Made by a program: the position numbers and the translations under genes. Of a DNA stretch of 64,000 bases, positions 15,435 through 42,178 are shown piece by piece (position 1 is the stretch's first letter; each line of letters begins with the position of its first letter). The DNA is taken from positions 186,001 to 250,000 of IMG/VR virus record IMGVR_UViG_3300035212_003113, one strand, 5' to 3'. A model generated the notes under the pieces. That model had not been told where the DNA came from and did no database searches. It saw nothing but the letters and a program-made list of their open reading frames with translations.

Positions 15435-15460
15435 AAACGGGGCCGCGAGGCCCCGTTTTT
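15435..15460. terminator. Bidirectional terminator between convergent genes
   Basis: AAACGGGGCC-gcga-GGCCCCGTTTTT. Confidence 0.9.
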
Positions 15461-16826
15461 ATTTAATCACGCCCGCCTTTGCGGCAGCAATCATCTCATG
15501 TCGTCTACCTGGATCTGCCCAGTCTGCTTGTGCAGACGACCCTAGTGATACCAGTGGATCATAGTAGCAAAAAACTTCACCGGGCTTTACGCTGGGCGCC
15601 GCATATACCGAGATGCCGCTGCTCCGGTCGTACGCCTCGAACGAGTGCGCATCGCGCTTGCCGCCCCCTCCAGGAGCGTCTACAACGAACACAGGCGTGT
15701 TGAAGCCGGCAGTACTGCCTCGCACCCCCTTCTCGATCTCAAGGGCCGTAGAAACCGCTGTACGCAAGTCCTCCGTGCCGCGCACCAAGTCGTGCACGTA
15801 TACATAATAAGGATGCACATTAATCCAGCTCAGCCGCTTTACCAGCATCTTCATAGTTTCTATGCTATCGTTCACGCCGCGCTGCAGTACGCTCTGGTTA
15901 CGGACAGTGACTCCGCGCTCCATCAGCAGATTGCACGCCCGTGCACTGATTCCTGTTATTTCCGCAGGATGATTAAAGTGCGTATGAATTACCACTTCCT
16001 TGTGCAGCTGGCGACCGCGAGCCGCAATATCGCAGATCGCATCAGTCCATGCTGTATCGGTCAGCACCTTCATTGGCTGGATTGCAAGCCCTTTTGTAGC
16101 GTAGCGCCACCGCCGTACATGCGGAATGGCCAGTAACCGCTCTCCAATAGCACGCACTTGATCGGCGCGCAGCCGGTAGCTGTCTCCGCCACTCACAACG
16201 ACATCCTCTACCTCGGGCCGCGATTCGATGTACTGGAAGATCCTCGACCAGCGCTCCTCGTCGGCCTTCAGACTGATCTTTTCTACCATATCTGTATCCA
16301 GGCCGACCGCATAACTGCGCGTACAAAAACGGCAATAGACCGGGCATGTATCAAGTGCTAGAAATAGTACTTTATCTGCATAGCGATGCGTCAACCCTGG
16401 CACCGGGCTGTCGTCCTGCTCGTGTAGCGAGTCCAGAGTCAACATGGGATGATCGGGCTCTAATTCACTGCCTACTGGCAGGAATTGCCGGCGAATTGGA
16501 TCAGTATACGGGCTTGACCAGTCGATCAGGCTCATTAGATACGGGCTTATGCGAACGGCCATGGGAGCAGCGGCAAATCCAGCTTGCACATCTGCAATGA
16601 AATCTTCTGACACAAGGTCGCGAACCGCGACTACTAGCCGGTCTGCTGAAGTTATCGCATTTTTTTCCTGCCAGGTGTGGCTTAGGAAAGCCCCCTCGTC
16701 GATCTCGCTCCACGCCGGAATCTTCCTCCAAAACTCGTCCGTGCGCAAGTTGCGGTGATCCAGGGCTGCGGCCGGAGCTGGCGGCTTAAGACTGTTAACG
16801 CTGTCAAGAATTTGTAGTTTGCTCAT
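15459..16826 (-). CDS. kamA: KamA-family radical SAM enzyme (lysine 2,3-aminomutase-like)
   Basis: DPIRRQ, GLTHRY, CPVYCRFCTR, SGGD, HFNHP, NQSVL, PYY, DAPGGGGK (PLP lysine); start moved to ATG 16826. Confidence 0.9.
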   Translation of the reverse strand: MSKLQILDSVNSLKPPAPAAALDHRNLRTDEFWRKIPAWSEIDEGAFLSHTWQEKNAITSADRLVVAVRDLVSEDFIADVQAGFAAAPMAVRISPYLMSLIDWSSPYTDPIRRQFLPVGSELEPDHPMLTLDSLHEQDDSPVPGLTHRYADKVLFLALDTCPVYCRFCTRSYAVGLDTDMVEKISLKADEERWSRIFQYIESRPEVEDVVVSGGDSYRLRADQVRAIGERLLAIPHVRRWRYATKGLAIQPMKVLTDTAWTDAICDIAARGRQLHKEVVIHTHFNHPAEITGISARACNLLMERGVTVRNQSVLQRGVNDSIETMKMLVKRLSWINVHPYYVYVHDLVRGTEDLRTAVSTALEIEKGVRGSTAGFNTPVFVVDAPGGGGKRDAHSFEAYDRSSGISVYAAPSVKPGEVFCYYDPLVSLGSSAQADWADPGRRHEMIAAAKAGVIK

Positions 16827-16833
16827 GGCTACT

Positions 16834-16839
16834 ATTACA
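16834..16839 (-). promoter_or_regulatory. Candidate leaderless promoter element TGTAAT, 7 nt before kamA ATG
   Basis: ATTACA on + strand; no SD. Confidence 0.55.
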
Positions 16840-16884
16840 AGATTGCCCATTCATGCGACCTTGAGGCTGGTAGTAGCGTGCAAC

Positions 16885-16910
16885 AAAAAACCCCGCTTTT
16901 TCAGCGGGGT
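16885..16910 (-). terminator. Intrinsic terminator after the adhesin gene
   Basis: ACCCCGCT/AGCGGGGT stem with T-tract on the minus strand. Confidence 0.8.
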
Positions 16911-16935: not shown

Positions 16936-19227
16936 TCAGCTGCCTGAAGTCGGATGCGAACCCGGAAGGCCAAAGTTCGCTGTATAGCGAGCAACGCCTT
17001 TGGTTATGCGGAAATCATCTATATGCCCAAAATAGCCAGAAGTACCTGGATTTGTTGTGGAGACTGAGCCAATTACAAGTGGTTCGCCGTTAGATGGAAT
17101 TGTGCCACTTGCCGTACCAATTGCTGCAGAAGTGCCATTGACGTATAGGGTAAACGTGCCTCCACTCCTAACAAATGCCAGGTGCGTCCAAGTGTTTGCA
17201 GGGATAATATCACCAGTCGCCGCGCTTACGGCCCAACTGGTACCATTAGTTGTGGCATAGTAATACGCACGGTACGCATTAAGTGACGAGTTGAACTGCA
17301 AGAATCCTATAACACCTCCGTAAATACTAAGCGACTGTCTTTTACCAAACAGGTATTTTTGCGTCCCATTTGCAAGGCCGTTAATAGGATTAATCCACAT
17401 TTCAATTGTATAGTTTCCAGATCCAAATTCAAGACTCTGGCTTGAAGGAACAGATAGATAATCTCCAACGCCATCAAAATATAAACTCGAGCCGCCATAT
17501 CTGCTTTGTGCCGTGCTAATAAAGGCATTGCCGACTCGTGATACCGCAAAGGCATTGGCGCTGCTGTCAACAAACGACGTGCTGCCATTTGCCCCATCGG
17601 CCTTCATTAGCAGCGAGACGCTTGAGAAGTACGGGTCCGAGACTGGGTGGGAGCCCGGAGGCGTAAAGTTCGCAGTGTATCGGGCGATACCTTTGGTCAC
17701 ACGCAAGTCGTCTATGTAGCCGTTGAGGTCGTAGGTGTAGCCGGGGACAGATGTTCTGCCGACGAGCTGGGCGTGCGTTGTAGTTACATTCTGACTCGAC
17801 AGTGTTGTCGAGCCTATCAGTGCCCCGTTGAGAAAAAATCGCGTCAGAGTCCCTTGCCGAGATACTGCTGCGTGGTGCCACTGGTTTTGGGCAACCGTGG
17901 CAGGAGCGTTGAGCCCGCCCCCGCTACCGGACTGGTAGTTCTCAAAGCCTAGCCCAGTTCCGGTGGTTGACGAGTCGCCTAGTATGTAAAAGTTGTAGCC
18001 CATGGAGGATCCTGAAGGTGCAAAACATGAAAATATGGTCGCGATTCGCTGGTTGCCCGCACTCAGCGGCGAGTTTCCAGCGATAAAAAACCAGCACTCT
18101 ATGGTGAAGTTGCCAGTCCCGAAGCTGAACAGCGCGGAGTTTGCAATAGATAGGTTGTCCCCGCTGCCATCAAAATATGCACTGGATCCGCCGAACTTAC
18201 TCTGTGCGGTTCTAATCGCAGCATTACCAAGCCTTGAGATGGCAAGATTATTAGCGCTGCTATCGACAAACGACGTGCTGTTATTTGCCCCGTCAGCCTT
18301 AAGTAATAGCGAGACGTTTGCGAAGGATGCGTCCACAGCGTCCGCAACCGTAAGCGTGACCGTAGCTGCAGCAGAATTCGCCGTGCCATCGTTGACCCTG
18401 AAGGTAAAGCTGTCTGAGCCGGAATAGCCGCTATTCGGAGTATACGTCAGGCTTGGAGCCGTACCGGTCAAGGAGCCGTTGGCAGGATTCGTCACAACCG
18501 TGTACGTCAATGCGCTGCCTTCGACATCGCTGCCCGCCAGAGTTATTGCAGTTGCGGTGTCACGGTTCACCGATACGCTCTGGGCAGTAGCCGCAGGCGT
18601 GTCATTGACGGCAGTTACTGTGATGCTAACGGTAGCAGTAGAAGAGTTCACGTACCCGTCGTTAACGCGGAACGTAAAGCTGTCCGAGCCGTTGTAGTTC
18701 GCATTGGGCGTATAGACCAGGTTCGGGGCGTTACCCGTCAGCACGCCATTGCTTGGGCCGGCGACTACTGCGTAGGTCAGCGGATTTCCGTCGATATCAC
18801 TGCCTGTCAGGGTAATAGCAACGTAGCCGTCTTCGAGCACGCTGACGCTCTGGGCAGTAGCCTCAGGCGTGTCATTAACCGCAGTTACTGTTATTGAAAC
18901 AGTAGCCACGGCCGAATCTGCTGTACCATCATTAGCTTTGAACGTAAAGCTGTCCGAGCCGTTGTAGTTTGCGTTAGGCGTATAAGTCAGGCTCGGAGCG
19001 GAGCCACTTAGGACGCCATTAGTCGGGCCGTCAACTACTGTATAGGTCAGTATATCGCCATTTGCATCACTGGCAGTGAGCACGATGTTGGCCGCAGCAT
19101 CCTCAGATGTCGAGATGTTCTGGCCTACAACTACGGGAGCCACAGGGCCGGTACCAGGTAGAACTGTATCCGAAGTCTGAGAGGTCGATAGTATAGCTGG
19201 ACTTAATAAACCAAAATTACTGGGCAT
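16936..19227 (-). CDS. Virion surface/adhesin protein: three Ig-like (Big_9/cadherin-like) repeats plus two LamG/ConA-like domains
   Basis: 3x LTYTPN..Y.GSDSFTF..NDG; 2x VSLL.KADGAN.STSFVDSS...FDG.GD..., DD.R.TKG.ARYTANF; SD GGAG before ATG 19227. Confidence 0.85.
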   Translation of the reverse strand: MPSNFGLLSPAILSTSQTSDTVLPGTGPVAPVVVGQNISTSEDAAANIVLTASDANGDILTYTVVDGPTNGVLSGSAPSLTYTPNANYNGSDSFTFKANDGTADSAVATVSITVTAVNDTPEATAQSVSVLEDGYVAITLTGSDIDGNPLTYAVVAGPSNGVLTGNAPNLVYTPNANYNGSDSFTFRVNDGYVNSSTATVSITVTAVNDTPAATAQSVSVNRDTATAITLAGSDVEGSALTYTVVTNPANGSLTGTAPSLTYTPNSGYSGSDSFTFRVNDGTANSAAATVTLTVADAVDASFANVSLLLKADGANNSTSFVDSSANNLAISRLGNAAIRTAQSKFGGSSAYFDGSGDNLSIANSALFSFGTGNFTIECWFFIAGNSPLSAGNQRIATIFSCFAPSGSSMGYNFYILGDSSTTGTGLGFENYQSGSGGGLNAPATVAQNQWHHAAVSRQGTLTRFFLNGALIGSTTLSSQNVTTTHAQLVGRTSVPGYTYDLNGYIDDLRVTKGIARYTANFTPPGSHPVSDPYFSSVSLLMKADGANGSTSFVDSSANAFAVSRVGNAFISTAQSRYGGSSLYFDGVGDYLSVPSSQSLEFGSGNYTIEMWINPINGLANGTQKYLFGKRQSLSIYGGVIGFLQFNSSLNAYRAYYYATTNGTSWAVSAATGDIIPANTWTHLAFVRSGGTFTLYVNGTSAAIGTASGTIPSNGEPLVIGSVSTTNPGTSGYFGHIDDFRITKGVARYTANFGLPGSHPTSGS

Positions 19228-19305
19228 TAATTCTCCCTGGATCACTGGCCTTGCACGAATTTTGCTTGGCCATACTGCAGTATATTTAGTACCGTCGGCA
19301 GCTCC

Positions 19306-19325
19306 CGGCCGGGGTACCCCGGCCG
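19306..19325. repeat. Perfect 20-bp palindrome between divergent genes
   Basis: CGGCCGGGGTACCCCGGCCG equals its own reverse complement. Confidence 0.9.
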
Positions 19326-19376
19326 CAAAACCTATCATTGCAGGCGCATAGAGGTAATGTCAAAAGCCGGAGCACC

Positions 19377-19852: not shown

Positions 19853-19985
19853 ACCTGCCAGCCAAAATATGCCAGACCGCCGGCTATAAAATGTAATTCA
19901 ATACGAGATAGGTTAAGATTTTTATTAGCAGTCGAGGTGATTTATTTCTAAGTCAAGCAATTCCCAGTATCTTTATCGCGAGGTC

Positions 19986-20378
19986 GTGGTCGACCCTGTT
20001 ATCCTTTCTACCGTTTATCTCAAAAACGCAACGTATAACATCAACGAAGTTGAGCTGATGGAAGAACTCAAAGAACTTCAGGATCGGCTGATTGCCAAGA
20101 TCAAAGAGGTCATTGATACGTGCTTGACCGAGAGGCAGCGCGAGGTGATGATACGGACGTATTTAGAGCAAAGAACGCAGATGGAAGTGGCAGACATGCT
20201 AGGGGTATGTCAGACGACTGTACATAAGATTATCTCTGGCAATATCGACTATTCCAACGGAGGGAGACGTTACGGCGGAGCGCTAAAGAAGATAAAGAAG
20301 ATCTGCGAAACTGATCAAGAAGTGGTGCAGATTCTCTCTCGTCTCGAGGAGATCAAGGGACTTCTGAGCGAAACCTAG
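19986..20378 (+). CDS. Stand-alone sigma70 region-4-like HTH protein
   Basis: LTERQREVM..TYLEQRTQMEVADMLGVCQTTVHK; start uncertain. Confidence 0.7.
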   Translation: MVDPVILSTVYLKNATYNINEVELMEELKELQDRLIAKIKEVIDTCLTERQREVMIRTYLEQRTQMEVADMLGVCQTTVHKIISGNIDYSNGGRRYGGALKKIKKICETDQEVVQILSRLEEIKGLLSET

Positions 20379-20470
20379 CGCTTTCAGGTCTTCGTCTGGC
20401 CATTATTTCCTATTAAACATGAAACCACAGAGCCCGTGATCCGGTGAACGGTTGTTTGCAGACACCAACA

Positions 20471-20493
20471 AAAAGCCCGCTTTGCGGCGGGCC
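20471..20493 (-). terminator. Intrinsic terminator (paralog of 21302-21326)
   Basis: GCCCGC-cgcaaa-GCGGGC-TTTTT on the minus strand. Confidence 0.75.
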
Positions 20494-20497
20494 ATTT

Positions 20498-20623
20498 TCA
20501 TTCTTCTTCTACAGCAAGTCCTAGCAGTACGCCGTCAACCGCGTCTCCTTCACGCGCCAGTTCAGCTGCATAAAGCTTGTTCACTACCTTTACAGGACTA
20601 GAGAGTAAATCGGCCTTGCGAGC
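20498..20623 (-). pseudogene. Start-less diverged copy of the 3' end of gene 21331-21672
   Basis: ARKADLLSSPVKVVNKLYAAELAREGDAVDGVLLGLAVEEE* vs ARKADLLTSLVKVANELDAAGLANEADAVDSVLRGLAAVEE* (29/41 identical by hand); in-frame TAG at 20642-20644 with no start codon between. Confidence 0.8.
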
Positions 20624-20654
20624 ACTTGGGGTAAAAACAACCTAGCCCGGTTGC

Positions 20655-21218
20655 TTATTTTTTGATCGTACTGAGCTCTGAACCTGCATGCCCTACCTTA
20701 CCAACGTTTATAGAGAACTTGCCCTCGTTGGTTTCAACATCCAGCGTATCACCGCTTTTTGCCCAAATAAGAATTGACTCTCCATGCTTGGTCTGTTCTG
20801 CTCCTTTTGCAGATGTTACAGTTACTTGTCCATCAGCTGAGTTATGTGTTAGAAAGAGTGCCATATAATTTGGAAAATACTCTACAGTTACGCTAGCAGA
20901 TTTGGTGGTTTCATCTTCTATTGGGACTATAGAGACGCCCCAGCCATGAGCATTTAGAAGTTTTAGAAGAGAATCGATTGTCCGTACTCCGTCTAGTGCA
21001 CCTGCGATCTGCATGCCGGGTAAAGAATGTCGGGTTTGTCCTTCTCCACCTTGTAGTGATGCGCCACAATGGGGGCAAACTTTTTCTTTGGCACCTGCAT
21101 CTACTGCAATTTTTTTAAACCGATCTCCGATATCCATGGCTAGGCGAGCATTTCGGGCATCACCCTTCTGTAGGAATTTCTGCGCAAGGTCATACGCAGC
21201 AGCAGTCTTTTTAAGCAT
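20655..21218 (-). CDS. Hypothetical protein (CPHC knuckle), N-terminal LKKTA motif
   Basis: SD GAGG; 187-aa ORF. Confidence 0.7.
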   Translation of the reverse strand: MLKKTAAAYDLAQKFLQKGDARNARLAMDIGDRFKKIAVDAGAKEKVCPHCGASLQGGEGQTRHSLPGMQIAGALDGVRTIDSLLKLLNAHGWGVSIVPIEDETTKSASVTVEYFPNYMALFLTHNSADGQVTVTSAKGAEQTKHGESILIWAKSGDTLDVETNEGKFSINVGKVGHAGSELSTIKK

Positions 21219-21301
21219 AAGGAGCCTCTTTATTTGGGGCCCTTTGCCTGAGCCCGGTCAAACTTTCATATTTCTTATTTTCGGATTCATAGAAGCAACT
21301 G

Positions 21302-21326
21302 AAAAACCCGCTTCGCAGCGGGCTTT
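21302..21326 (-). terminator. Intrinsic terminator
   Basis: GCCCGC-tgcgaa-GCGGGT-TTTT on the minus strand. Confidence 0.75.
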
Positions 21327-21330
21327 CAAT

Positions 21331-21672
21331 TCACTCTTCTACCGCAGCCAGCCCACGCAGTACACTATCAACTGCGTCTGCTTCGTTGGCCAATCCAGCT
21401 GCATCGAGCTCGTTCGCGACCTTTACGAGGCTAGTGAGCAGGTCGGCTTTACGAGCATTTAGGGCAAACTGAATCTGGCCTAATAGTTCTCGCTCGGCCT
21501 TTGTCAACTTCTTGTCGCCCTCTGCGCGCGCCTGGAGCTCCTTCTTTTTCTTTTTTAGAAGTGCGGTTGGGATCTTCTTGTCCGCAGGCACCTTGAGCTT
21601 TTTATGCAGCTCGCCCTTTTCCTCAAGATTAACGGCTCCCTGCATCCACTTGTTTTTTTTCTTAGCAGCCAC
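21331..21672 (-). CDS. Small Lys-rich basic protein with C-terminal shared helical module
   Basis: KWMQGAV...GELHKKLKVPADKKIP; SD GAGGTG; possible DNA-condensing core protein (inference). Confidence 0.75.
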   Translation of the reverse strand: MAAKKKNKWMQGAVNLEEKGELHKKLKVPADKKIPTALLKKKKKELQARAEGDKKLTKAERELLGQIQFALNARKADLLTSLVKVANELDAAGLANEADAVDSVLRGLAAVEE

Positions 21673-21769
21673 TGCGCACCTCTATAAAATGATCTAGCGC
21701 ATTGCTTTGCAATATTTAGTAGAGGGGCTGAACTGGCAGCCCTTGCTATTATTGAAGCAGTAGGAGCCC

Positions 21770-22522
21770 ATGAGCAACAAATTCCCTTTGTTTAAGACTG
21801 CTGGATCGGGGCTAAAGGCTGAGGCTGGCCTATCGGAGATTGCAGACAGCGTACTAGATAAGATAAAAGATCTTAGCGACAGTGATGCAGTCAAGACAAT
21901 AAAACAGTTGCCAAAGGACATCTATAACAAGCTATTTGGCGATGATGCCGACGAGCCTGTCAGTGATGACAAGCAGGCTCCGGCTCCTCCAAAGACAAAA
22001 AAGTATTATCAGCAGGTGCTCTCGGAGAGCGAGAAGAAGACGCCGGGTGGAAAGCCTATAACTGTCACAAAGCTGCAGACCATTCCTGGTCCCCCTGGAT
22101 CAGATGATGCTTTTTATGCACGAGTACTAAGTGGCATCGGCGCTCCTGTAACACCCGAGACAAAAAAATTTCTATATGCATGGAGAAAGGCAGAGGGAGG
22201 GATGGCTGCATTTAATCCATTTAATACCACAAGATCACTATCCGGCGAGACACTGACGAATTATAATAGCCACGGCGTAAAAAACTACCCCAGCGAAGAC
22301 CACGGGGTAGCTGCAACAATTGCCACGCTTCTGGGTGGAAAGTACAGTTCTATAGTGGATGCCCTCAGGGACCAGTCTCCTGGTGCCGCTATGCGTGCGG
22401 CGCAGGCATTGGCAAAGACTCCCTGGGGCACTGGTCGCGGAGTTATAAACGTACTGCGCAGCAAGCAGATCACTCGCATGCCAATTTACTGGCTACCTGA
22501 AGAAGGCAGTGCGCTGACCTAG
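21770..22522 (+). CDS. Putative lysozyme-fold/lytic transglycosylase-like protein
   Basis: AWRKAEGG...FNPFNTT...NSHGVKNYPS...G.AAT..TL..G.Y; SD AGGAG. Confidence 0.55.
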   Translation: MSNKFPLFKTAGSGLKAEAGLSEIADSVLDKIKDLSDSDAVKTIKQLPKDIYNKLFGDDADEPVSDDKQAPAPPKTKKYYQQVLSESEKKTPGGKPITVTKLQTIPGPPGSDDAFYARVLSGIGAPVTPETKKFLYAWRKAEGGMAAFNPFNTTRSLSGETLTNYNSHGVKNYPSEDHGVAATIATLLGGKYSSIVDALRDQSPGAAMRAAQALAKTPWGTGRGVINVLRSKQITRMPIYWLPEEGSALT

Positions 22523-22572
22523 ACAGGCTATTCATATGATCGGTTAATTCCGATCTTTATATGTAAAATTAC

Positions 22573-22583
22573 CTATTAATCCG
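22573..22583 (+). promoter_or_regulatory. Candidate late promoter CTATTAATCCG
   Basis: Identical 11-mer at 49822; CTA(T/A)TAA recurs upstream of structural genes. Confidence 0.5.
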
Positions 22584-22630
22584 GGAGCTCTATTTTGGCC
22601 ATAGGTCTAAATTACCGGTATTGGAGTAAC

Positions 22631-23110: not shown

Positions 23111-24602
23111 TATTAAGCACCAGCTTGATGCTTTTATTAAGGCTGCCTCTGCAGCGATTGTCGAAGACTCCAAAGATTATTTTATATCGGATGTACTCGG
23201 CCGCATTGAGACTGCCTATGGTCGTACAAAAGATGCCAGCCTGCATGCGCTTCACAACATCGTGAAGTCGCACAAGGACAGCGTAATCATCAGCCGCGCC
23301 GAACTGCGCAGCGGTTGGGAGCGCGTTGCTAGCCTTGGGCGTGCAGATGTGGTTCGCGACGAGATCGGCGACCTCCTGGGTGCCGCTGCTCCGGACACTG
23401 GTGTTGTGCGCAGCTCGGAAAAGACCGCAATGAATGCAGGTGGCGCTGCCATTGATATCTCGGTTGACGAGTCTGCCAAGTACGCAGCGCTATTTGGTGA
23501 GCACGTCGCCACCCGCTCTATCCGCAGTGGTGCCGATGCAGTGTCTGCCGAAATTCGCGACTATGGTCTTGACGCCAAGCTTACGCTGGCTGCCCAGGAT
23601 TCGCGCTTTGCTGTATTCGCAGCAGAGCTAAGCGATGGCAAGCGCACCGCCAGTGCACTGATTCCTGTTGAAGTAAAAAACGGCAACGTCCTGCTCCCGT
23701 CGGTATTCTTCGGCTCCACCTTTTCTGAATTTAATGCAGACAATCTCAACAAGTGGGCATCCGCTGGTGGTGCCGCATCGGTATCTGCCGTAGGCCTTCT
23801 GGATCATTTGAATAATCTTGCTGGTCCAGCGCTGGTCGAGGCCGGCAAGGCAGAGTGGGACGCCGGGATTGGCATTGCTGGCGGTACAGGCGTTGACCTT
23901 GGCCAGGCCGCTTCGCCTGTCCTAGCTAACGCAGAAGTTCCGGCCGAGCTCACTGCGGCTGCCCGTGATCTGGGTGGCACTGATTTCGAGCAGATCTTTA
24001 AAGAGGCTACTGTCAAGTGCGGCCAGGAGAAGCTTGCATCTGCTCGCCAGATGCTCGCCAATGAGCTGCGCTTTGCAAACGTTCGCCATGATAAGATTGT
24101 AGTCGACAGCGAGCTGGAGAACGGCATTCGCCTTGGCACGCATGTCCGCACGGCTGCTGGCAAACAGTACATAACCGTCCCAGTAGAATTTGATGGCAAG
24201 AGCGTACTGCTCCCCGGCTTCTTCCAGGCCGGCAACCGCGTACTTGAATTCTCGGATCACGCTCTGCACTCTGTTGCAGCAGATGGCGAGACGTCATTCC
24301 GGTCAATTGCAAGCAGCATGCGCACTGCTTCATTCTCTGACCTCTACAAAGTAGTCATCAAGAATGCTCAGTTTGGCAACCTAGCTGGTGCCGAAGAGGC
24401 GATGGCAGTTATCCTAGAAGAACATGGTGAAGAGCTCCATCGTCAGGCATTCCAGGATATGATCTCTGTCATTCAGAAGAGCGCCACCATGGAGCGTAAC
24501 GATTTCGACAAGTACGCAGCAGACCTGGCCGACGGCGGCAGCGAGACGGCTAATTATGTCTCTAACAAGGTAAACCTGGCCATGTTTGGCCTTCTGGATT
24601 GA
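23103..24602 (+). CDS. Hypothetical head-cluster protein with internal duplication
   Basis: IPVEVKNGNVLLPSVF vs VPVEFDGKSVLLPGFF. Confidence 0.8.
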   Translation: MSDIKHQLDAFIKAASAAIVEDSKDYFISDVLGRIETAYGRTKDASLHALHNIVKSHKDSVIISRAELRSGWERVASLGRADVVRDEIGDLLGAAAPDTGVVRSSEKTAMNAGGAAIDISVDESAKYAALFGEHVATRSIRSGADAVSAEIRDYGLDAKLTLAAQDSRFAVFAAELSDGKRTASALIPVEVKNGNVLLPSVFFGSTFSEFNADNLNKWASAGGAASVSAVGLLDHLNNLAGPALVEAGKAEWDAGIGIAGGTGVDLGQAASPVLANAEVPAELTAAARDLGGTDFEQIFKEATVKCGQEKLASARQMLANELRFANVRHDKIVVDSELENGIRLGTHVRTAAGKQYITVPVEFDGKSVLLPGFFQAGNRVLEFSDHALHSVAADGETSFRSIASSMRTASFSDLYKVVIKNAQFGNLAGAEEAMAVILEEHGEELHRQAFQDMISVIQKSATMERNDFDKYAADLADGGSETANYVSNKVNLAMFGLLD

Positions 24603-24604
24603 TT

Positions 24605-25129
24605 ATGCTTAAAATCGCAAGTATAGAAAAAGAAATCACAGAACTAGATGGTGCTGGTAGCGACGAGAAAACTCGTGCTGCCGCAGCTCTTGATTTTGCA
24701 GCATACGATACGGATGATCTGCGTCGCGTAGCTGCACTTGTAGTGGGCTTTGCCGATGCATTTGACGCAGACGGCCACAAGACTGCTGCAGATGCACTTG
24801 ATCGCGTTCTGAATAAGTTCGCTGCCTCGCCAGAAGCATTCTGGGATCCGCCAAAGCGCCGTCCTATGGACCTGGTGCCGCCAGTACGCTCTTCCCTGGG
24901 GGACATTGGACACAGTCTCAGTACGAGACACTCGCCCGATCTTCCTGGTGTCCAGCTCGTACGCGTTTCAGATGGCGTATACCGCGATCCAGTAACCAAC
25001 AAGACATATGACTTTCATCGTGGCTTTGTGCTGGATGACGGCACAAAATACGTCGGAGGCTCTGTATCGGCCCAGACGCCGGCCGGAAACGAGAAGTTTA
25101 GGCCACTGAAGCAGCAAATAGACTACTGA
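24605..25129 (+). CDS. Hypothetical head-cluster protein carrying the shared helical module
   Basis: MLKIAS N-terminus; FADAFDADGHKTAADALDRVL. Confidence 0.75.
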   Translation: MLKIASIEKEITELDGAGSDEKTRAAAALDFAAYDTDDLRRVAALVVGFADAFDADGHKTAADALDRVLNKFAASPEAFWDPPKRRPMDLVPPVRSSLGDIGHSLSTRHSPDLPGVQLVRVSDGVYRDPVTNKTYDFHRGFVLDDGTKYVGGSVSAQTPAGNEKFRPLKQQIDY

Positions 25130-25882: not shown

Positions 25883-27233
25883 CTATTCCGATCCAAAGCT
25901 AGATGGCGAGATGCTCCAGATCCTGGAGCGTATAGCTGCGCGTGCAGCTGGCAGTGGCGTAAATCCAAATGACCTAGTAAAGTATCTTTTCTTAGAGAGG
26001 ATTGTACACGATGGACTGCGGCACATTGGACTGCATTTCTCCGATGCAGAACGAAGACCTCTGATTATGCACCTAATGCGGTGCGACGTGGATGATCTAA
26101 AAGGTATAGCAGATGAGATGGTCTCTGTGCTCAAGGGCATGAGTGATAAGAATATCACTTACAGCTTTAAGTTAGGAGACAGGATCAAGAAGGCTTATCC
26201 AGTACGGGTAGATACAGCTGTATATACGGGTATAAATAAAGATTTCCCGGGTCTGGCGTCGCGGGCCGCAAACTTAATATCTTCGGGCCTATTAGAACCA
26301 GACGCAATTCGTAGAACAATCTCTCACCTCCCAGTGAGCGACCGACTTGACTTCTTGACCTGGTATGGATTAAAGTACAAGTCAGGAAAAAATATTTCTT
26401 ACTTGGCTGCCCAGGAGGACGTCTTGATCAAAAAAGTTGCTAATGGGGACGATCAGTTTCCTAGCTATATCTACGAGTTTGAGCGCCGAAACAAGCCTGC
26501 TGCAGAGGTTCCGGTTTCGGTAAGCTTTGCAAAAGATTCTGACGCAGATCCAATGTCTGCCGCTGAGTTTAAAAAGATGCGGGAGAAGATGGTCGGCAGG
26601 ACATTTGCCATTGACAAACTTCTGGAGAAATACCGTCACCTTCTCAAGGAAGAGCAGTTTGATGCGGTAGAAGATAGCCTTAATGCGCTGCGCAAAAACA
26701 TCCGCAGACTAAAGGTTGCTACACTTAGTGACGCAATAGAAAAAACTGCATTCATGGCAGAGCAAAACGACTGGTTCGAGGGAGCAGATCTTATTCGCCG
26801 CCTGGCAGCTAGTGATGAGCAATTCGTAAAGATTGCAAATCTAATATCACGTCCAGAGGACTTGGGCAAGGTATTGAAGTCTCTTGATGAAATCTCCGGC
26901 TTCCTGCGTCAGCGCGCCATAATAAGAGAGCTGTCGGCGCGTGATATCGATATCTTTAATCTTGGATTTGGCCATATGCCCGAGATTGGCGACGCAGCGG
27001 CAAAGCTAATGGAGGCATTTAATGGCGCTGCAAATAAAATAGACGATCTTGTTAGCAAGCTTCGCGCAGAGCTCCAGCAGCAGACCGCTCCGAAGATGGC
27101 TCCGGAAGTGGTTAAAACGCTCGTCAAGCCCCAGGACCTGCCCCTTGTCAAGGCTCTTGAGCCAGGCGTCGCTCCTGCGCAACCAGAGCCATCTGGCGAA
27201 TTAGCTCCTCTGCCCAAGAAGCCTCTTCTATGA
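25875..27233 (+). CDS. Hypothetical head-cluster protein
   Basis: Several KxA motifs, one helical module, Pro-rich tail. Confidence 0.75.
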   Translation: MFDYSDPKLDGEMLQILERIAARAAGSGVNPNDLVKYLFLERIVHDGLRHIGLHFSDAERRPLIMHLMRCDVDDLKGIADEMVSVLKGMSDKNITYSFKLGDRIKKAYPVRVDTAVYTGINKDFPGLASRAANLISSGLLEPDAIRRTISHLPVSDRLDFLTWYGLKYKSGKNISYLAAQEDVLIKKVANGDDQFPSYIYEFERRNKPAAEVPVSVSFAKDSDADPMSAAEFKKMREKMVGRTFAIDKLLEKYRHLLKEEQFDAVEDSLNALRKNIRRLKVATLSDAIEKTAFMAEQNDWFEGADLIRRLAASDEQFVKIANLISRPEDLGKVLKSLDEISGFLRQRAIIRELSARDIDIFNLGFGHMPEIGDAAAKLMEAFNGAANKIDDLVSKLRAELQQQTAPKMAPEVVKTLVKPQDLPLVKALEPGVAPAQPEPSGELAPLPKKPLL

Positions 27234-27937
27234 AAACCGTAGCGCATCTTATGAAAAAAGTTGCCGATATAGCTCGCATGTGCGGACTACCGCGGCCTTT
27301 TATCGTTGGAGGCGCAGTTCGCAATATGATATCTGGGACGGACCCTGCGGACTATGACATAACTTGTGGCTCTGAGCATAATCTACGCCTTGCAGACGAA
27401 GTCGCCAAACACTTTGGCGTACCGGTTTATGAAACCGGGGTCGGCGCCAAGAAAATGGTTATAGATGGTGTAGAGCTGGACTTCAGTCCTCATGTCATCT
27501 ATCATCACAGCGAGAAAGGTCCTTTTGAATCAGAGACCTATAGCCGCGATTTCACCATAAATACCATGATGGTGGCATGCGACAATGGTGAATTCGTAGA
27601 CCTATGTGGCGGGCTACAGGATCTAGAGAGCAGGATCATAAGATGTCCAGTCAGTCCTCAGGTAACTTTCAAGGACCCGGCCCGACTACTCAGGCTGCTG
27701 CGCCATATCGCAGACGGCCTAAGCCCTGATTCAGAAACAGAGGCGGAAGCATGCGCTCAATTTCACAATGTGGCGAAGCTGCATCACCGGCATGCGGGCA
27801 AGATGATAAATGATGCTATTCGCAAGAATCCGGCCGTGCTAGACTGGCTGCATAGTCGTGGTTTAATTAAGCATGTTCCAATGACAAAACTTATAATAGG
27901 AGAGCTGGCACGCCGTCGGCTACTGCACCATGCATGA
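27230..27937 (+). CDS. CCA-adding enzyme/poly(A) polymerase-family nucleotidyltransferase (short)
   Basis: FIVGGAVRN, DYDI, SRDFTIN, GGLQDL, KDPARLLR. Confidence 0.85.
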   Translation: MKTVAHLMKKVADIARMCGLPRPFIVGGAVRNMISGTDPADYDITCGSEHNLRLADEVAKHFGVPVYETGVGAKKMVIDGVELDFSPHVIYHHSEKGPFESETYSRDFTINTMMVACDNGEFVDLCGGLQDLESRIIRCPVSPQVTFKDPARLLRLLRHIADGLSPDSETEAEACAQFHNVAKLHHRHAGKMINDAIRKNPAVLDWLHSRGLIKHVPMTKLIIGELARRRLLHHA

Positions 27938-30246: not shown

Positions 30247-30279
30247 AAGTCCGGCTTAAAATGCCGGATTTATGTTTTT
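30247..30279 (+). terminator. Hairpin/possible terminator before terL
   Basis: AAGTCCGGC-ttaaaat-GCCGGATTT followed by a T-rich tract. Confidence 0.5.
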
Positions 30280-30290
30280 GTGGAGCAAGC

Positions 30291-32150
30291 ATGGTAAGCC
30301 CTAAGAAAATAAAAGCTTTAACACCGAAAGACATTTTTGATGAAATCAAGAAAGATATCTCAAAAATAGATCCAGTTAGCTTTGCAGAAAATCATTTGAC
30401 AATAGACGGAAAGCCATTCGACTTATCGGGCTCGGGCTGGAAGTACATGGCGGAAATCTATCGGATGATATCTGCTCAGGTAGAGAATAAAGAGGCGCGC
30501 CCAATTGTTCTACTGAAGGGACGTCAGGTCGGTGCAACCATCATGGCAGGGGTGCTCAGCCTACACATGGGTAGCTCTGGCCTATATGGTATTGAATCCG
30601 GCAAACCCCCGATCCGAGTCATGCATGTTTTTCCTGATCTGAAGCGCTGCGGCGTGTATGCAAAGGATATTCTTGCAAGTCTAATTAGCGGTGCTAAAGA
30701 GAATTATATCTCAAGGCGTGCGCTTAAGGTTGCAAAGGTCGTAGATCTGGAGGACACGCAGACCCAGAAGAATTTTGTCGGCATGAACAAGATTCGTATC
30801 GACTCCATAGGGAAGTCAGGCGACCGTATTCGCGGTAGCACGCAGGATGTTTTGCTTTATGATGAAATCCAAGACATGGGGCGCACTGCCATAGAGAATA
30901 CTCTCAAGGTTCTAACTGCAACCCCATACGGTGCTCCTACTAAGGGGGTACAGGTATTCTTTGGAACGCCTAAGCATGCAGGCTCATACTTCTGGTCTCT
31001 CTGGGAAGACTCTGATCAGCGATTTTATCAACTGCGCTGCAAGCATTGCGACCACCATTTCTTTCTCTATAATCTTGAAAATGATGACTGGAACGAGACT
31101 TGGGTAAAAGAGCAACTAGTAAAGTGTCCTTCCTGCCTAAAGACTCAGGACAAGAGAGAGGCAGTAGACCTGGGAAGGTGGGTCGCAACTAAGCCGTTTA
31201 ATGCAAAGGGCGAGCCGCAGAAATTCGTAGGATATCATTTTAACATGATGCTTAGCCCTCTCTTCACAAAAGAGAATGTGCTTGAGTACTGGCCGCAGCA
31301 TAATAAAAATGCATCCGAGCGGGCATGGAGAAACGAGACCAAGGGGCAATTTTACTCTGCTAGCGAAGTACCGCTTACCTTGGAAGAGGTTTATGCAAAT
31401 GCTCTCGACGAGAGTCGCGGCGTTGCAAAAAGTATATCCTCTCCAGCCGGCAAGAGTTACTTCCTTGGGATGGACTGGGGTGAGAAGGTTGAATCTGATT
31501 CAGACCTAGAGGCGAAACGCGGCAAATCTTTCACCTGTGCTGTCATACTATCAGTGGATCACACAGGCGTTCTCACTATAGAGAATGCGGTTCGCCTAAA
31601 AAAGAATGACCCGGATTACAAGATGAATGTTGTCCGCAAACTAATGTCTGATTTTCACATAGATCAGGCGGCAGCAGACTTTTATTACGGCAACGACTTT
31701 GTTCGACTGGTTCAGCATAACGAGGGCCTAAAGGATAAATTCTTGGGCTGCACAAATCTCAGTAACTCTAAGCGAGCTTTCTCTTATGATGAGAAAGACC
31801 TAATGGTAGGCGTGAACAAGGACCAGGTCCTTGATGAGATATTTGCTCTATTTAAGAGAGGGCGTATAAAAATACCGGCCAAAGGCGACTCACTAGAGCT
31901 ACTGAGTTGGCTAGTTGATCATATTACGTCCATGGAAACACACACCAAGACAAAAGACGGCATTGTGCTAAAAACATATAAAAAGGGCGTAATACAGAAC
32001 GACGGATTAATGGCACTAATGTACGCATATACAGCGTACAAATTCATGGTAACTCGCAAATTCAGCGAATTTGCAGTCGAGGGTGTAAATAAAAAACGCC
32101 AAGAAGAGGTAGTTGTTCCAGTTGTGGGCTACATTCCGCGCATGCACTGA
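30291..32150 (+). CDS. terL: Terminase large subunit (lambda gpA-like)
   Basis: Walker A KGRQVGAT, Walker B LLYDEIQD, motif III FGTP, CxxC...CxxC, nuclease GMDWG and NDGLMA; SD GGAG before ATG 30291. Confidence 0.9.
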   Translation: MVSPKKIKALTPKDIFDEIKKDISKIDPVSFAENHLTIDGKPFDLSGSGWKYMAEIYRMISAQVENKEARPIVLLKGRQVGATIMAGVLSLHMGSSGLYGIESGKPPIRVMHVFPDLKRCGVYAKDILASLISGAKENYISRRALKVAKVVDLEDTQTQKNFVGMNKIRIDSIGKSGDRIRGSTQDVLLYDEIQDMGRTAIENTLKVLTATPYGAPTKGVQVFFGTPKHAGSYFWSLWEDSDQRFYQLRCKHCDHHFFLYNLENDDWNETWVKEQLVKCPSCLKTQDKREAVDLGRWVATKPFNAKGEPQKFVGYHFNMMLSPLFTKENVLEYWPQHNKNASERAWRNETKGQFYSASEVPLTLEEVYANALDESRGVAKSISSPAGKSYFLGMDWGEKVESDSDLEAKRGKSFTCAVILSVDHTGVLTIENAVRLKKNDPDYKMNVVRKLMSDFHIDQAAADFYYGNDFVRLVQHNEGLKDKFLGCTNLSNSKRAFSYDEKDLMVGVNKDQVLDEIFALFKRGRIKIPAKGDSLELLSWLVDHITSMETHTKTKDGIVLKTYKKGVIQNDGLMALMYAYTAYKFMVTRKFSEFAVEGVNKKRQEEVVVPVVGYIPRMH

Positions 32151-35601: not shown

Positions 35602-36495
35602 ATGCCAAAGTTCCTTTCTAAACGAGAAGAAAAGACCTGGAAAAAGGCCAAGTCTGCTTTTAAGAAGCAGAAGGGCCGAGCTCCGGGAAAAAAAGATTGG
35701 CCGCTAGTGATGCATATTTTCCAGGGCATGGAAAAGCGTGCAGTGAACATAGTTATTAAGCCGTACGAAATTTTTGTAAAAGAAGGCCTCGACCTGGTTG
35801 AACAGGTCTTTGGTGCTGGCTATTTCTCTGGCGTAAGTACCATTGTTGTGCAGCCGCACCAGACGCATCACTATGGAGAAGTCATTTCTGACGATCCAGA
35901 GACAATATACATATCGGCAGACAGGATAGAGCAGGAGTTTGCGCAGCATCCGTTAGAGAGGGCGTTTCAAATGGCCTCTACTCTTGTTCACGAAATGGGA
36001 CACATTAAATCTGGATTCAAGGGCGGAGAGGGCCCGGCCGAGGCCGAGGAGCATCGTTTTGCTCAGGTATTTAAGGAAAAGATTAAGTCAAATCCTGAGG
36101 CATTCAAGAAGTTCGATAAGAAATCCGTACTGCACGCCGACTTGGTTCGCCTCGCCAATGATGCAGATCTAGATGGTCACGTTGCGGCGGCCGACTTCTT
36201 AGATTCTGCTTTGCACAAAAAGGCAGATTCAACTGCAGATGTTGAGCAGATAATCCAAGGGATTATTGCACTTATCCGATACATGGTTAGCCGTGTATCA
36301 GATGAGAACAAGCAGAGCTTCAAAAACAGCCTTTTGCTAAAAATACGTCAGATATCCCCAGAGCTGTCTCAGAAAAGGAAGAACCCTTCTGCTGGCATAG
36401 GTGCCGTTTTTGGTCTTCTGAAGAACTTGATGGCAGGATTAGATCCTGCTCAGATAGGGTATATAGTTGGGCAGATTGCTTCGAGGGCAGCATGA
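35602..36495 (+). CDS. HExxH metallopeptidase-motif protein with shared helical module
   Basis: TLVHEMGH...GE..AE; LVRLANDADLDGHVAAADFLD. Confidence 0.65.
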   Translation: MPKFLSKREEKTWKKAKSAFKKQKGRAPGKKDWPLVMHIFQGMEKRAVNIVIKPYEIFVKEGLDLVEQVFGAGYFSGVSTIVVQPHQTHHYGEVISDDPETIYISADRIEQEFAQHPLERAFQMASTLVHEMGHIKSGFKGGEGPAEAEEHRFAQVFKEKIKSNPEAFKKFDKKSVLHADLVRLANDADLDGHVAAADFLDSALHKKADSTADVEQIIQGIIALIRYMVSRVSDENKQSFKNSLLLKIRQISPELSQKRKNPSAGIGAVFGLLKNLMAGLDPAQIGYIVGQIASRAA

Positions 36496-37748: not shown

Positions 37749-37885
37749 TAATTAAATACGGGACATCCGAGGCCGCCGAAGTAATCGATGCGAAGAATAT
37801 TCCTTCGTGGGTGACTCGCGATCCGCCGAAATCCGAGCAGGATGGCGTGACGGAGTCTGACGATAATACAGAGGAAAAAGAATGA
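37745..37885 (+). CDS. 46-aa micro-protein absent from the ORF track
   Basis: MIIKYGTSEAAEVIDAKNIPSWVTRDPPKSEQDGVTESDDNTEEKE; ATGA overlaps at both ends, SD AAGGA. Confidence 0.65.
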   Translation: MIIKYGTSEAAEVIDAKNIPSWVTRDPPKSEQDGVTESDDNTEEKE

Positions 37886-41841: not shown

Positions 41842-41985
41842 ATGTTTGACTTAGACCGGCTTGAGATGCAGTCAGAAATGCAAGAGCTGAAAGAGTTGGG
41901 CCTAGATCCGGAGGAAATACGAGGATATATATGTTTTTTCTGGGTAGATTCTGAAGAAAGTGAGGTAGGAAATGTCATCAATTGA
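41842..41985 (+). CDS. 47-aa acidic micro-protein absent from the ORF track
   Basis: MFDLDRLEMQSEMQELKELGLDPEEIRGYICFFWVDSEESEVGNVIN; SD GAGG. Confidence 0.55.
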   Translation: MFDLDRLEMQSEMQELKELGLDPEEIRGYICFFWVDSEESEVGNVIN

Positions 41986-42178
41986 TATCGCAGATGAGAT
42001 CGCAAAGGGAATGCAGGATGCCTTGACAGAGAATGCTCCCAAGATCGAAGGGCACTTTTCAGGCGTTGCTAACCAGCTGGCCAATACTGCCAATGCGTTA
42101 GATGCTGCCGGTAGCCCGTTGGCTGCACGAGTAGACTCGCTGCTTGGTCAGATGGTCAGTGTACTAGGAGAGGACTGA
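41972..42178 (+). CDS. Small protein consisting largely of the shared helical module
   Basis: LANTANALDAAGSPLAARVDSLL; SD GAGG/AGGA. Confidence 0.7.
   Translation: MSSIDIADEIAKGMQDALTENAPKIEGHFSGVANQLANTANALDAAGSPLAARVDSLLGQMVSVLGED

What the first reader, a model, noticed from the sequence alone, without database searches (positions are those of the whole stretch)
20471..21456. Decayed duplicate of the helical-module-plus-terminator unit flanks an inserted gene
Seen: 20498-20623 repeats the last 41 codons of gene 21331-21672 (29/41 aa identical), beginning exactly at ARKA, keeps the stop codon and a paralogous terminator, but has no start. Gene 20655-21218, itself beginning MLKKTA, lies between the copies. 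Inference: a footprint of how cargo genes are gained, by tandem duplication or recombination at the module, and independent evidence that KxA plus helix moves as one unit.
Basis: partly seen in the sequence, partly recalled or inferred. Interest (0 to 1): 0.6.

Follow-up and report, generated by a model that had tools for sequence, protein, structure and literature searches.

The report
Dead gene-end inside a swappable phage cassette
A 150-base dead copy of the end of a small gene sits behind its neighbour in a lake-water jumbo phage; it is a scar of the ordinary recombination that swaps small gene cassettes at this variable spot, not a working part.

Summary
Window 20498-20647 (- strand) is a diverged copy (73% nt; 29/41 aa from ARKA) of the last 49 codons plus stop of gene A (21331-21672), and a related hairpin terminator follows each copy. 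The copy is dead: it has no start, a TAG where every A homologue has Gln, and lost invariant residues. It lies +1 out of frame with gene B.

- Homology starts 8 codons before ARKA, inside A's conserved core helix.
- The two terminators, T1 and T2, also flank B-type genes in relatives that have no remnant.
- The remnant is not a copy of the resident A. It is equally far from four A alleles, and half of its differences are states seen in other alleles.

Relatives show this interval is a hotspot, 0.96 to 10.4 kb long. I found an empty site (A-T), sites with a different B-type gene, and a second lineage where B plus the remnant sits 6.3 kb from A. That block is 99.5% identical to the window, while the flanking genes are only 69-84% identical.

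Best reading: the remnant is a pseudogenised fragment of an A allele. Recombination in A's 3' end created it, and it now hitch-hikes in a cassette exchanged through B's conserved N-terminal coding segment and the terminator hairpin. This is a known kind of phage mosaicism (PeSL- or moron-like).

The parts
21331..21672 (-). Gene A, 113 aa. It has a conserved Lys-rich helical core (residues about 8-76, ending ...GQIQFALNARKA) plus a variable C-terminal helix-turn-helix module.
   Evidence: ORF. 19 homologues with an invariant core and a variable tail. AlphaFold2 model mean pLDDT 77, helices 58-91 and 95-111. No Pfam or PHROG family.
21331..21480 (-). The intact copy of the repeat: A codons 65-113 plus stop.
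   Evidence: the repeat finder family D1, BLAST, codon alignment.
21307..21322 (-). T1, the hairpin terminator after A. It is orthologous to the hairpin that precedes B-type genes in relatives.
   Evidence: Terminator scan. Window 21326-21250 matches the region upstream of B-like genes in four relatives at 75-91%. Alignment with L045 and L048.
21219..21306 (-). Conserved leader between T1 and B, containing ...CTATGAAT...AAATATGAAAG... and the RBS. It is a single copy in this genome and is repeated before every B-family gene in relatives.
21105..21218 (-). B N-terminal segment (about codons 1-38), shared at 62-92% aa by all B-family genes. It is the left homology arm of the exchanged block.
   Evidence: Helical hairpin with block-mean pLDDT 72-91. 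Differences from the BUCK lineage stop at 21126.
20655..21104 (-). B C-terminal domain 'Y'. It is an orphan: relatives exist only at 90% identity or more. GC is 44% and GC3 0.31, against 51% for the genome.
   Evidence: Word search of 5.8 billion proteins and exhaustive HMMER search of 1.84 billion. No paralogue in the genome. Composition.
20648..20654 (-). The 7-nt junction between B's TAA and the first homologous base of the remnant. An A6 run (20658-20663) lies just before the TAA.
   Evidence: Sequence and frames.
20498..20647 (-). The remnant: a pseudogenised copy of A codons 65-113 plus stop. It is in the +1 frame relative to B, with TAG at 20642-20644.
20474..20493 (-). T2, a bidirectional hairpin terminator. 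It is orthologous to the terminator after B-like genes in relatives and is the right homology arm.
   Evidence: Window 20497-20431 is 95.5% identical to the post-B-like region in two relatives. The identity block with BUCK ends at 20485.
20431..20473 (-). The 'post-T2' conserved spacer. In contig L047 it directly follows A-T.
20485..21125 (-). A 641-nt block (B codon about 32 to stop, the junction, the remnant and half of T2) with 3 differences from a lineage whose flanking genes are 69-84% identical.
   Evidence: Seen again in an independent run (record 14).
19986..20378 (+). Convergent sigma-70 region-4-like gene. It is the conserved right flank of the variable interval.
   Evidence: Pfam PF04545, E 1.6e-8. 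94-96% aa identity in relatives.

Best explanation
The remnant is a non-functional 3' fragment of an A-family gene (codons 65-113 plus stop). It was left behind when a small gene cassette was joined next to, or into, an A gene by recombination inside A's 3' end. The event was either a single crossover with a circle or fragment carrying [A 3' end - T1 - leader - B], or an unequal exchange between two co-infecting relatives. Either event leaves the homologous segment as a direct repeat. The upstream copy stays attached to A and remains a gene. The downstream copy has no 5' part and decays.

Since then the remnant has travelled as a passenger inside a cassette made of B's C-domain, the remnant and T2. 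Related freshwater jumbo phages exchange this cassette by homologous recombination between two conserved arms: the sequence coding for the B-family N-terminal hairpin on the left and the T-type terminator hairpin on the right. Recombination between T hairpins also deletes or stacks whole cassettes.

Shown here: the homology, the lesions, the empty, alternative and stacked site states, and the 99.5% block.
Inferred: the order of events, the type of crossover, and that the hairpin and N-terminal segment act as recombination arms.
For: 1. Homology and lesions. The repeat is statistically solid. The remnant has no start, TAG at the invariant Gln66, and changes at invariant A70 and L71 and nearly invariant N72. 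The module's conserved Asp and the turn Gly are also lost. A module profile built without the remnant scores it 10 bits, over the last 11 positions only, against 33-40 bits for working A modules of other lineages.

2. Polarised differences. The 19 remnant-only changes fall 8/8/3 over the codon positions, at sites invariant in six alleles, which indicates relaxed constraint. The other 22 differences are states present in other A alleles, 16 of them at third positions, which is ordinary allelic divergence. The remnant is equidistant from four alleles.

3. Site states among relatives:
- A-T-postT2 with no cassette (L047).
- A-T1-leader-N segment-domain X (L045, L048).
- T-leader-X-T-leader-Y-remnant-T2 (BUCK contigs L025, L043).
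- A followed by convergent fibre genes (four IMG/VR contigs, L050).

Remnant-T2-postT2 aligns collinearly with L047's A 3' end-T-postT2.

4. Recent exchange. There are 3 differences in 641 nt against 69-84% identity in the flanks, with edges at B codon about 31 and inside T2.

5. The same N-terminal segment precedes four unrelated C-domains. One of these also occurs fused behind A's module.

6. Recoding is unlikely. Reaching the remnant needs a +1 shift and TAG read-through. The five tRNAs include no suppressor. TAG ends 19 of 117 long ORFs and ends the neighbouring sigma-like gene. The RNA fold is unremarkable, z = -0.29.
Against: - No intermediate was found: no A allele close to the remnant (best 65% aa), no Y gene without the remnant, and no genome with A split by the cassette.
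- The direction of the recent transfer and the place where the Y-remnant junction arose are not determined. The window's own lineage remains a candidate, because the remnant belongs to its A clade.
- Only 49 codons are available, so rate arguments are weak. A dN/dS of 0.22 is compatible with several histories.
- The T hairpin arm is only about 30 nt, and promoter activity of the leader is not shown. No sigma-70-like site was reported there.
- Retention of 150 nt of apparently useless DNA over about 13% unique divergence is unexplained.
Confidence: 0.7

Rival explanations
1. Local tandem duplication in this genome's direct ancestor. A's last 49 codons plus terminator were duplicated around B in situ, and the downstream copy has decayed neutrally ever since. 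The copy in the other lineage was exported from here.
For: - A and the remnant are adjacent only in the window's lineage.
- The remnant belongs to the same A clade as the window's gene and is far from the BUCK lineage's A.
- The repeat spacing of 833 nt equals one unit of [A 3' end-T1-leader-B].
- The remnant-only changes look unconstrained.
Against: - The remnant is no closer to the window's A (41/147) than to L047, L048 or L045 (42-46/147), while those alleles differ by 24-35.
- 22 of the 41 differences are states found in other alleles, mostly synonymous. Total dN is less than half of what neutral decay since the split predicts from dS.
- T1/T2 paralogy is older than the remnant.
- The window's B N-terminal segment matches L048's X-type gene, which suggests that Y plus the remnant replaced X here.
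Confidence: 0.2
2. The remnant was once B's own C-terminal tail. In this model B was a single ORF (N hairpin - domain Y - A-like tail) ending at the stop before T2, later broken by a one-base change in the A6 run and a CAG-to-TAG change.
For: - Only 7 nt separate B's TAA from the first homologous codon.
- The TAA directly follows an A6 run, and the remnant is in the +1 frame.
- The remnant's stop sits at the same distance from T2 as the stop of B-like genes in relatives.
- A-module-domain fusions exist in the family (P0015, P0022, P0024).
Against: - No intact fusion appears in 5.8 billion or 1.84 billion protein searches, nor in about 20 contigs.
- Two independent lesions are needed.
- The fragment begins mid-helix in A's core, which is not a domain boundary.
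- The fragment has lost the module's conserved positions.
Confidence: 0.07
3. The region is still used, either as a product or as an RNA element. The options are a product made by frameshift plus read-through, a 27-aa micro-ORF from the internal GTG, or a 3' UTR or terminator-context element of the B transcript.
For: - There are zero differences in 150 nt between two lineages.
- One public gene call of 27 aa lies inside the region.
- The region has been retained for a long time.
Against: - The zero differences are explained by the recent transfer of the whole block: 3 differences in the 641-nt block, all 3 within the 449 nt of B's C-domain.
- Translation would need a +1 shift and TAG suppression, with no suppressor tRNA.
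- The fold energy is not different from shuffles.
- Conserved module positions are lost.
- The AGG is only about 3 nt before the GTG.
Confidence: 0.03

Closest known systems
PeSL-mediated modular shuffling in the hyperplastic regions of T4-type phages (Arbiol et al. 2010, PMC2839356; Comeau et al. 2014, PMC4122927)
   Same: - Small orphan genes sit in a hypervariable interval and are flanked by a repeated stem-loop terminator plus conserved leader.
- Close relatives show an empty site with a single element, occupied sites and alternative genes.
- Recombination between the flanking elements explains deletion, insertion and stacking.
   Different: - Here the element is local: two T hairpins, one similar hairpin at 16890-16910, and one leader in 371 kb. 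It is not a genome-wide family.
- No sigma-70-type promoter was detected in the leader.
- One homology arm is coding sequence, the B-family N-terminal hairpin.
- A gene fragment is carried inside the cassette.
- Mini-circles were not tested.
Morons of lambdoid and other phages (my knowledge: Juhala et al. 2000; Hendrix et al. 2000)
   Same: - A single extra gene with its own terminator lies between genes that are adjacent in a relative.
- Its base composition differs from the surroundings: domain Y has 44% GC and GC3 0.31, against 51% for the genome.
   Different: - A promoter is not demonstrated.
- The cassette shares a coding N-terminal segment with sister cassettes.
- It is flanked by a duplicated piece of the neighbouring gene.
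Displaced gene ends at insertion sites, such as the icd 3' end duplicated by prophage e14, or tRNA 3' ends at att sites (my knowledge)
   Same: - A direct repeat of the last about 50 codons of a gene brackets inserted DNA.
- The copy contiguous with the gene keeps it intact, and the other copy is a diverged orphan.
   Different: - There is no integrase or other recombinase in the 833-nt unit.
- The repeat is a by-product of general or illegitimate recombination between phage genomes, not of site-specific integration.
Mosaic exchange at conserved linker or boundary sequences in phage genomes (my knowledge: Susskind and Botstein 1978; Clark et al. 2001)
   Same: - There are sharp transitions from about 75% to 99.5% identity at short conserved segments.
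- Domain swapping occurs behind a conserved N-terminal segment.
   Different: - The scale is small: a 641-nt block.
- The setting is an uncultivated freshwater jumbo phage.

Membership tests
Pseudogene / gene remnant | Homology to a functional gene, but no start and an internal stop | tested here: met
   TAG at 20642-20644 in place of the invariant Gln66. There is no in-frame start before an internal GTG.
Pseudogene / gene remnant | Loss of residues conserved in the family, and changes not biased to synonymous sites | tested here: met
   The 19 remnant-only changes fall 8/8/3 by codon position at sites invariant in six alleles. The profile score is 10 bits, against 33-40 for functional modules.
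Pseudogene / gene remnant | Not translated | not testable with these tools
   Only DNA contigs were available. The single RNA run held 5% of the sampled words.
PeSL-type regulatory-cassette shuffling | Repeated stem-loop terminator plus conserved leader flanking variable ORFans | tested here: met
   T hairpin plus leader precede each B-family gene, and a T hairpin follows the last one, in the window, L045, L048, L049, L051 and the BUCK contigs.
PeSL-type regulatory-cassette shuffling | Empty-site relative carrying a single element | tested here: met
   L047 has the A stop, one hairpin with a T1-type 5' flank and a T2-type 3' flank, then postT2.
PeSL-type regulatory-cassette shuffling | Strong sigma-70-like promoter inside the element | tested here: inconclusive
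   The consensus scan lists no - strand site in 21219-21306. Phage-specific promoters are not covered by that scan.
PeSL-type regulatory-cassette shuffling | Many copies spread over the genome's hyperplastic regions | tested here: not met
   T-type hairpins occur only at T1 and T2, plus one similar hairpin at 16890-16910. The leader is a single copy.
PeSL-type regulatory-cassette shuffling | Excised mini-circles | not testable with these tools
   This needs outward PCR or read-level joints. Only contigs were laid, and no joints were seen.
Moron | Extra gene between genes that are adjacent in a relative, with its own terminator | tested here: met
   L047 lacks B. T2 is predicted as a terminator.
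Moron | Own promoter | tested here: inconclusive
   There is a conserved leader but no recognisable promoter.
Site-specific (integrase) insertion with a duplicated gene end | Recombinase encoded by the inserted element | tested here: not met
   The 833-nt unit holds only B, which matches no Pfam or PHROG family.
Programmed recoding (frameshift or read-through extension) | The shifted frame stays open into the extension, with means to decode any stop | tested here: not met
   The +1 frame hits TAG after five codons. There is no suppressor tRNA, and TAG is a normal stop in this genome.
Genome-wide helix-turn-helix terminal module (profile consensus roughly LAxxLDxxG....AD.LD) | Significant match to the profile built from at least 15 copies in this genome | tested here: met
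   This row is for gene A's tail. The remnant matches only partially (10 bits). B's N-terminus does not match (0.1 bit).

The most novel reading that the evidence does not exclude
The short terminal helical hairpins may be address or docking tags. These comprise the module on A and on at least 15 other proteins of this phage, and the separate B-family N-terminal hairpin. They could, for example, load proteins into the procapsid or onto a common hub. If so, the phage population would use the tag-coding DNA together with a terminator hairpin as fixed homology arms, so that new 'cargo' domains can be plugged in behind a ready-made address. That would be a tag-guided cassette system for diversifying delivered proteins. 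The remnant would then be a fossil of one such plug-in event.
Probability: 0.12. Interest if true: 0.7.

Novelty: new member of a known kind. Interest (0 to 1): 0.33.

Why it matters
This is a clean natural example, from an uncultivated 372-kb lake-water phage, of how small orphan genes are gained, swapped and lost. All the states are observed in environmental relatives: the empty site, alternative cassettes, stacked cassettes and a fossil junction. The breakpoints can be placed within a few dozen bases. It shows that a conserved N-terminal coding segment can serve as a recombination arm, which explains why four unrelated domains share one N-terminus.

The result warns against reading the repeat as evidence for a 'KxA plus helix' unit. 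The mechanism itself (mosaicism at short conserved elements) is well known, so the finding refines rather than changes the picture. The more interesting open question lies beside it: what the terminal helical module carried by at least 16 proteins does.

Tried and rejected
- Phage GenBank collection, blastn distant mode, with 19900-22600: no match.
- Pfam and PHROGs on A, B and ten module-bearing proteins: nothing informative for A or B.
- ESM Atlas feature search for A and for B residues 40-187: no usable lead.
- AlphaFold2 of B without an alignment: only the N-terminal hairpin is confident, overall mean pLDDT 57, so no fold search was made.
- Foldseek of the A model against the PDB: no match at E <= 0.001.
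- Exhaustive HMMER search for B: the C-domain is an orphan. Two weak repetitive hits (P0029, P0034) were not pursued.
- Metagenome contig scan with the A alignment: six loci and no allele closer to the remnant.
- Laying contigs of four runs on the locus: no length variation at the A6 run, no change at the TAG and no joints. The data are contigs only, so rare variants would be missed.
- RNA fold of the remnant region: z = -0.29.
- Alternative genetic code: rejected.
- Genome-wide search for the T hairpin and the leader, to see whether they are a dispersed family: they are local only.
- P0009, a 189-aa B variant: it differs only in the last three residues and comes from an 884-bp contig. I treated this as a probable contig-end effect.
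- Complex prediction was not used. I make no binding claim, and there is no well-founded partner for the module.
- Paper search for a described jumbo-phage terminal targeting helix: nothing matching.
Full report
**Setting**

The window is bases 186001-250000 of a 371,675-bp virus record with direct terminal repeats. GC content is 51% and the genome carries five tRNAs, none a suppressor. Near-identical DNA occurs in lake-water and other freshwater metagenomes from several studies.

The window also holds the head-morphogenesis genes:
- large terminase, 30261-32150
- portal, 32159-34000
- a 1269-aa protein with a prohead-protease domain, 37882-41691
- major head protein, 52615-53619

The finding lies in a short leftward-transcribed island between a rightward block (21770 onward) and a convergent sigma-70 region-4-like gene (19986-20378).

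**Anatomy of the locus on the - strand**

| Element | Window coordinates | Note |
|---|---|---|
| Gene A (113 aa) | 21672-21331 | |
| Hairpin T1 | 21322-21307 | |
| Leader (88 nt) | 21306-21219 | |
| Gene B (187 aa) | 21218-20655 | ends AAA AAA TAA |
| Junction (7 nt) | 20654-20648 | |
| Remnant (49 codons + TGA) | 20647-20498 | |
| Hairpin T2 | 20493-20474 | |
| Conserved spacer, postT2 | 20473-20431 | |

**Check of the observation**

- From ARKA onward the two peptides share 29 of 41 residues.
- At DNA level, 21302-21468 and 20471-20635 are 73.7% identical over 167 nt, with E 1e-22 in a local search.
- The repeat finder reports 151 nt at 73% with 833-nt spacing.
- A six-frame search of the whole genome gives E 2.5e-11 for the remnant.

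So the repeat is real. However, ungapped homology continues eight codons upstream of ARKA: GQIQFALN in A against G-stop-VVFTPS in the remnant, 16 of 25 bases. The copy therefore starts inside A's conserved core, 7 nt after B's stop.

**The remnant is dead**

- It is in the +1 frame relative to B, and a TAG sits five codons after any shift.
- TAG is an ordinary stop in this genome. It ends 19 of 117 long ORFs and ends the neighbouring sigma-like gene.
- The TAG replaces Gln66, which is invariant in 18 A homologues. Invariant A70 and L71 and the nearly invariant N72 are also changed.
- In the tail, a Pro interrupts the first helix, and the module's conserved Asp and turn Gly are replaced.
- A profile of the module built without the remnant scores it 10 bits, over the last 11 positions only. 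Functional A tails of other lineages score 33-40 bits.
- The RNA does not fold better than shuffled sequence (z = -0.29).
- Public gene callers leave the region empty in all but one record.

**What A and B are**

A belongs to a family of about 110-aa phage proteins. They have an invariant Lys-rich helical core and a fast-evolving C-terminal helix-turn-helix tail.

Two homologues (P0027, P0028) carry the tail-like hairpin at the N-terminus instead and end at ...NARKAKR or ...NARKS.... So ARKA belongs to the core, not to the portable part. AlphaFold2 predicts a single helix from residue 58 to 91, running across ARKA.

The tail belongs to a module found in at least 16 ORFs of this genome, mostly at the extreme N-terminus. 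Its profile consensus is roughly ILKDLVAIANELDAAGLEAAADAVDSVLEKLA.

B consists of a 38-residue N-terminal helical hairpin (block-mean pLDDT 72-91) and an orphan C-domain, here called 'Y'. Y has no relatives below 90% identity in either large protein search, no paralogue in the genome, and a low GC3 of 0.31. B's hairpin is not detectably a member of the genome-wide module.

**Relatives: a recombination hotspot**

Four IMG/VR contigs keep both flanks. The sigma-like gene, NUDIX gene and radical-SAM gene are conserved on one side, and the 250-, 171- and 499-aa genes on the other. Between A and the sigma-like gene they carry 6.1 to 10.4 kb, against 0.96 kb in the window. That content is one or two opposite-strand fibre-like genes of 870-1270 aa, in one case a LamG protein, a B-like gene, and an opposite-strand gene of 357 to 606 aa.

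DNA comparison of the window with these relatives shows the following:
- T1, the leader and B's first ~38 codons are orthologous to the region in front of the relatives' B-like gene.
- T2 plus 67 nt is orthologous, at 95.5%, to the region just behind that gene.
- Domain Y and the remnant have no counterpart.

Hence T1 and T2 are an older pair of related hairpins that bracket B-type genes. They are not a product of the remnant's duplication.

**Closer A alleles give the other site states**

| Contig (% aa identity to the window's A) | State |
|---|---|
| L047 (96%) | A, a single hairpin and postT2; no B |
| L045 (91%), L048 (93%) | A-T1-leader followed by a B-type gene with domain 'X'. L048's N-terminal hairpin is identical in amino acids to the window's. 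|
| L049 (85%) | A fused through its tail to a third domain, which elsewhere follows the B hairpin (P0030) |
| L050 (78%) | A followed by a convergent fibre-like gene |

Altogether the B hairpin precedes four unrelated domains. The window's remnant-T2-postT2 aligns collinearly with L047's A 3' end-T-postT2.

**A second lineage carries Y and the remnant**

In the 'BUCK' contigs the gene order is as follows:
1. A, 112 aa, with another tail and another terminator
2. a fibre-like gene, 754 aa, opposite strand
3. a LamG protein
4. T-leader-X gene
5. T-leader-Y gene
6. the 7-nt junction
7. the remnant
8. T2, then postT2
9. a 591-aa gene, opposite strand
10. the sigma-like gene

A lies 6.3 kb from B in this lineage. 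Between the window and this lineage there are 3 differences in 641 nt (window 21125-20485). The B hairpin differs at 11 of 115 positions, and the leader and the post-T2 sequence are largely different. Flanking genes are 69-84% identical. An independent run shows the same pattern.

This block has therefore been exchanged recently, with edges in the hairpin-coding segment and inside T2. The remnant moved with it.

**Origin of the remnant**

The remnant differs from the window's A at 41 of 147 sites. Its distances to L047, L048 and L045 are 42, 44 and 46. Those four alleles differ from each other by 24-35.

- Of the 41 differences, 22 are states present in other alleles, and 16 of these are at third positions.
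- The other 19 are unique to the remnant, distributed 8/8/3 over the codon positions, at sites invariant in the alleles.
- Overall dN/dS is 0.22, with dS near saturation.

The simplest reading has two parts. The first is ordinary divergence between functional A alleles. The second is about 13% unconstrained change after truncation.

A single crossover between a resident A 3' end and a circle or fragment carrying [A 3' end-T1-leader-B] would produce exactly the observed direct repeat with 833-nt spacing. So would an unequal exchange between two co-infecting genomes. It would also explain why the downstream copy is followed by T2-postT2, as in the empty site.

I cannot exclude an old local duplication. 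The remnant belongs to the window's A clade and not to the BUCK lineage's. I also cannot exclude that B once read through into the fragment.

**Comparison with what is known**

The anatomy matches PeSL-mediated shuffling in T4-type phages (PMC2839356) and the moron concept. It differs in three ways:
- The element is local: only two T hairpins, one similar hairpin and one leader in the genome.
- No sigma-70-type promoter was detected.
- One arm is coding sequence.

The displaced gene end resembles what site-specific insertions leave (e14 in icd; my knowledge), but no recombinase is present in the unit.

**Verdict**

The claimed unit 'KxA plus helix plus terminator' is not what moved. The remnant is a hitch-hiking pseudogene fragment, not a feature of a module. 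This is a new example of a known process and of modest interest. The separate question of what the terminal helical module does remains open and is more interesting.

Noticed in passing
Window 24599-25129, 35602-36495, 41969-42175 and 21331-21672. Genome loci L032-L042 (genome coordinates 14625, 19503, 20280, 24783, 25286, 61508, 64865, 77052, 100746, 265859, 336062).: A helix-turn-helix module of about 32 residues (LAxxLDxxG....AD.LD) occurs in at least 16 ORFs. It mostly starts within the first 10 residues, and is sometimes C-terminal or internal. The carriers are otherwise unrelated and mostly without family matches (DUF7178, DUF5661, one tape-measure-like). Several lie in the head-gene cluster. 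A docking or targeting role is my guess only.
   Followed up: partly
Proteins P0027, P0028, P0015, P0022 and P0024 (homologues of the gene at window 21331-21672): In the A family the tail hairpin can sit at the N-terminus instead of the C-terminus. In three members the tail is followed by an extra domain of about 55 aa that elsewhere follows the B-family hairpin (P0030). This looks like domain shuffling at the hairpins.
   Followed up: partly
Window 20378-21331 compared with relatives (merged loci L008-L016, L043, L044): The interval between A and the sigma-like gene is a hypervariable island. In relatives it holds fibre-like (YadA-stalk, Ala-rich repeats) and LamG proteins, probably host-range genes, plus an opposite-strand gene of 357-606 aa. 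One homologue (L047) carries a CxxCH-type HNH-like motif. All of these are absent from the window.
   Followed up: partly
Window 21138-21159, 21445-21466 and 20612-20633: A 22-nt stretch in B's hairpin (coding DARNARLA) resembles the A core stretch coding ALNARKA (18/22) and its copy in the remnant. By my estimate about 0.04 such matches are expected by chance in this region. It may be microhomology or distant kinship between B's hairpin and A's core helix.
   Followed up: no
Window 20655-20663: B ends with an A6 run directly before TAA, and the remnant's frame is +1 from B's. No length variants of the run were seen in contigs from four runs.
   Followed up: partly
Window 16890-16910 and 16936-19338: A third hairpin similar to T1 and T2 follows the 800-aa Big_9/cadherin/LamG protein. 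Public gene calls for that protein differ in start (735, 763 or 800 aa).
   Followed up: no
Protein P0032 (261 aa, B family): Its C-terminus (...ADNRSPDHGL) is the translation of the 'post-T2' spacer. So in that lineage the ORF appears to run through the place where T2 lies in the window.
   Followed up: no
Window 15459-16850, 27230-27937 and 54087-54941: Auxiliary genes: a radical-SAM / lysine-2,3-aminomutase-like protein, a tRNA nucleotidyltransferase-like protein and a thymidylate synthase.
   Followed up: no
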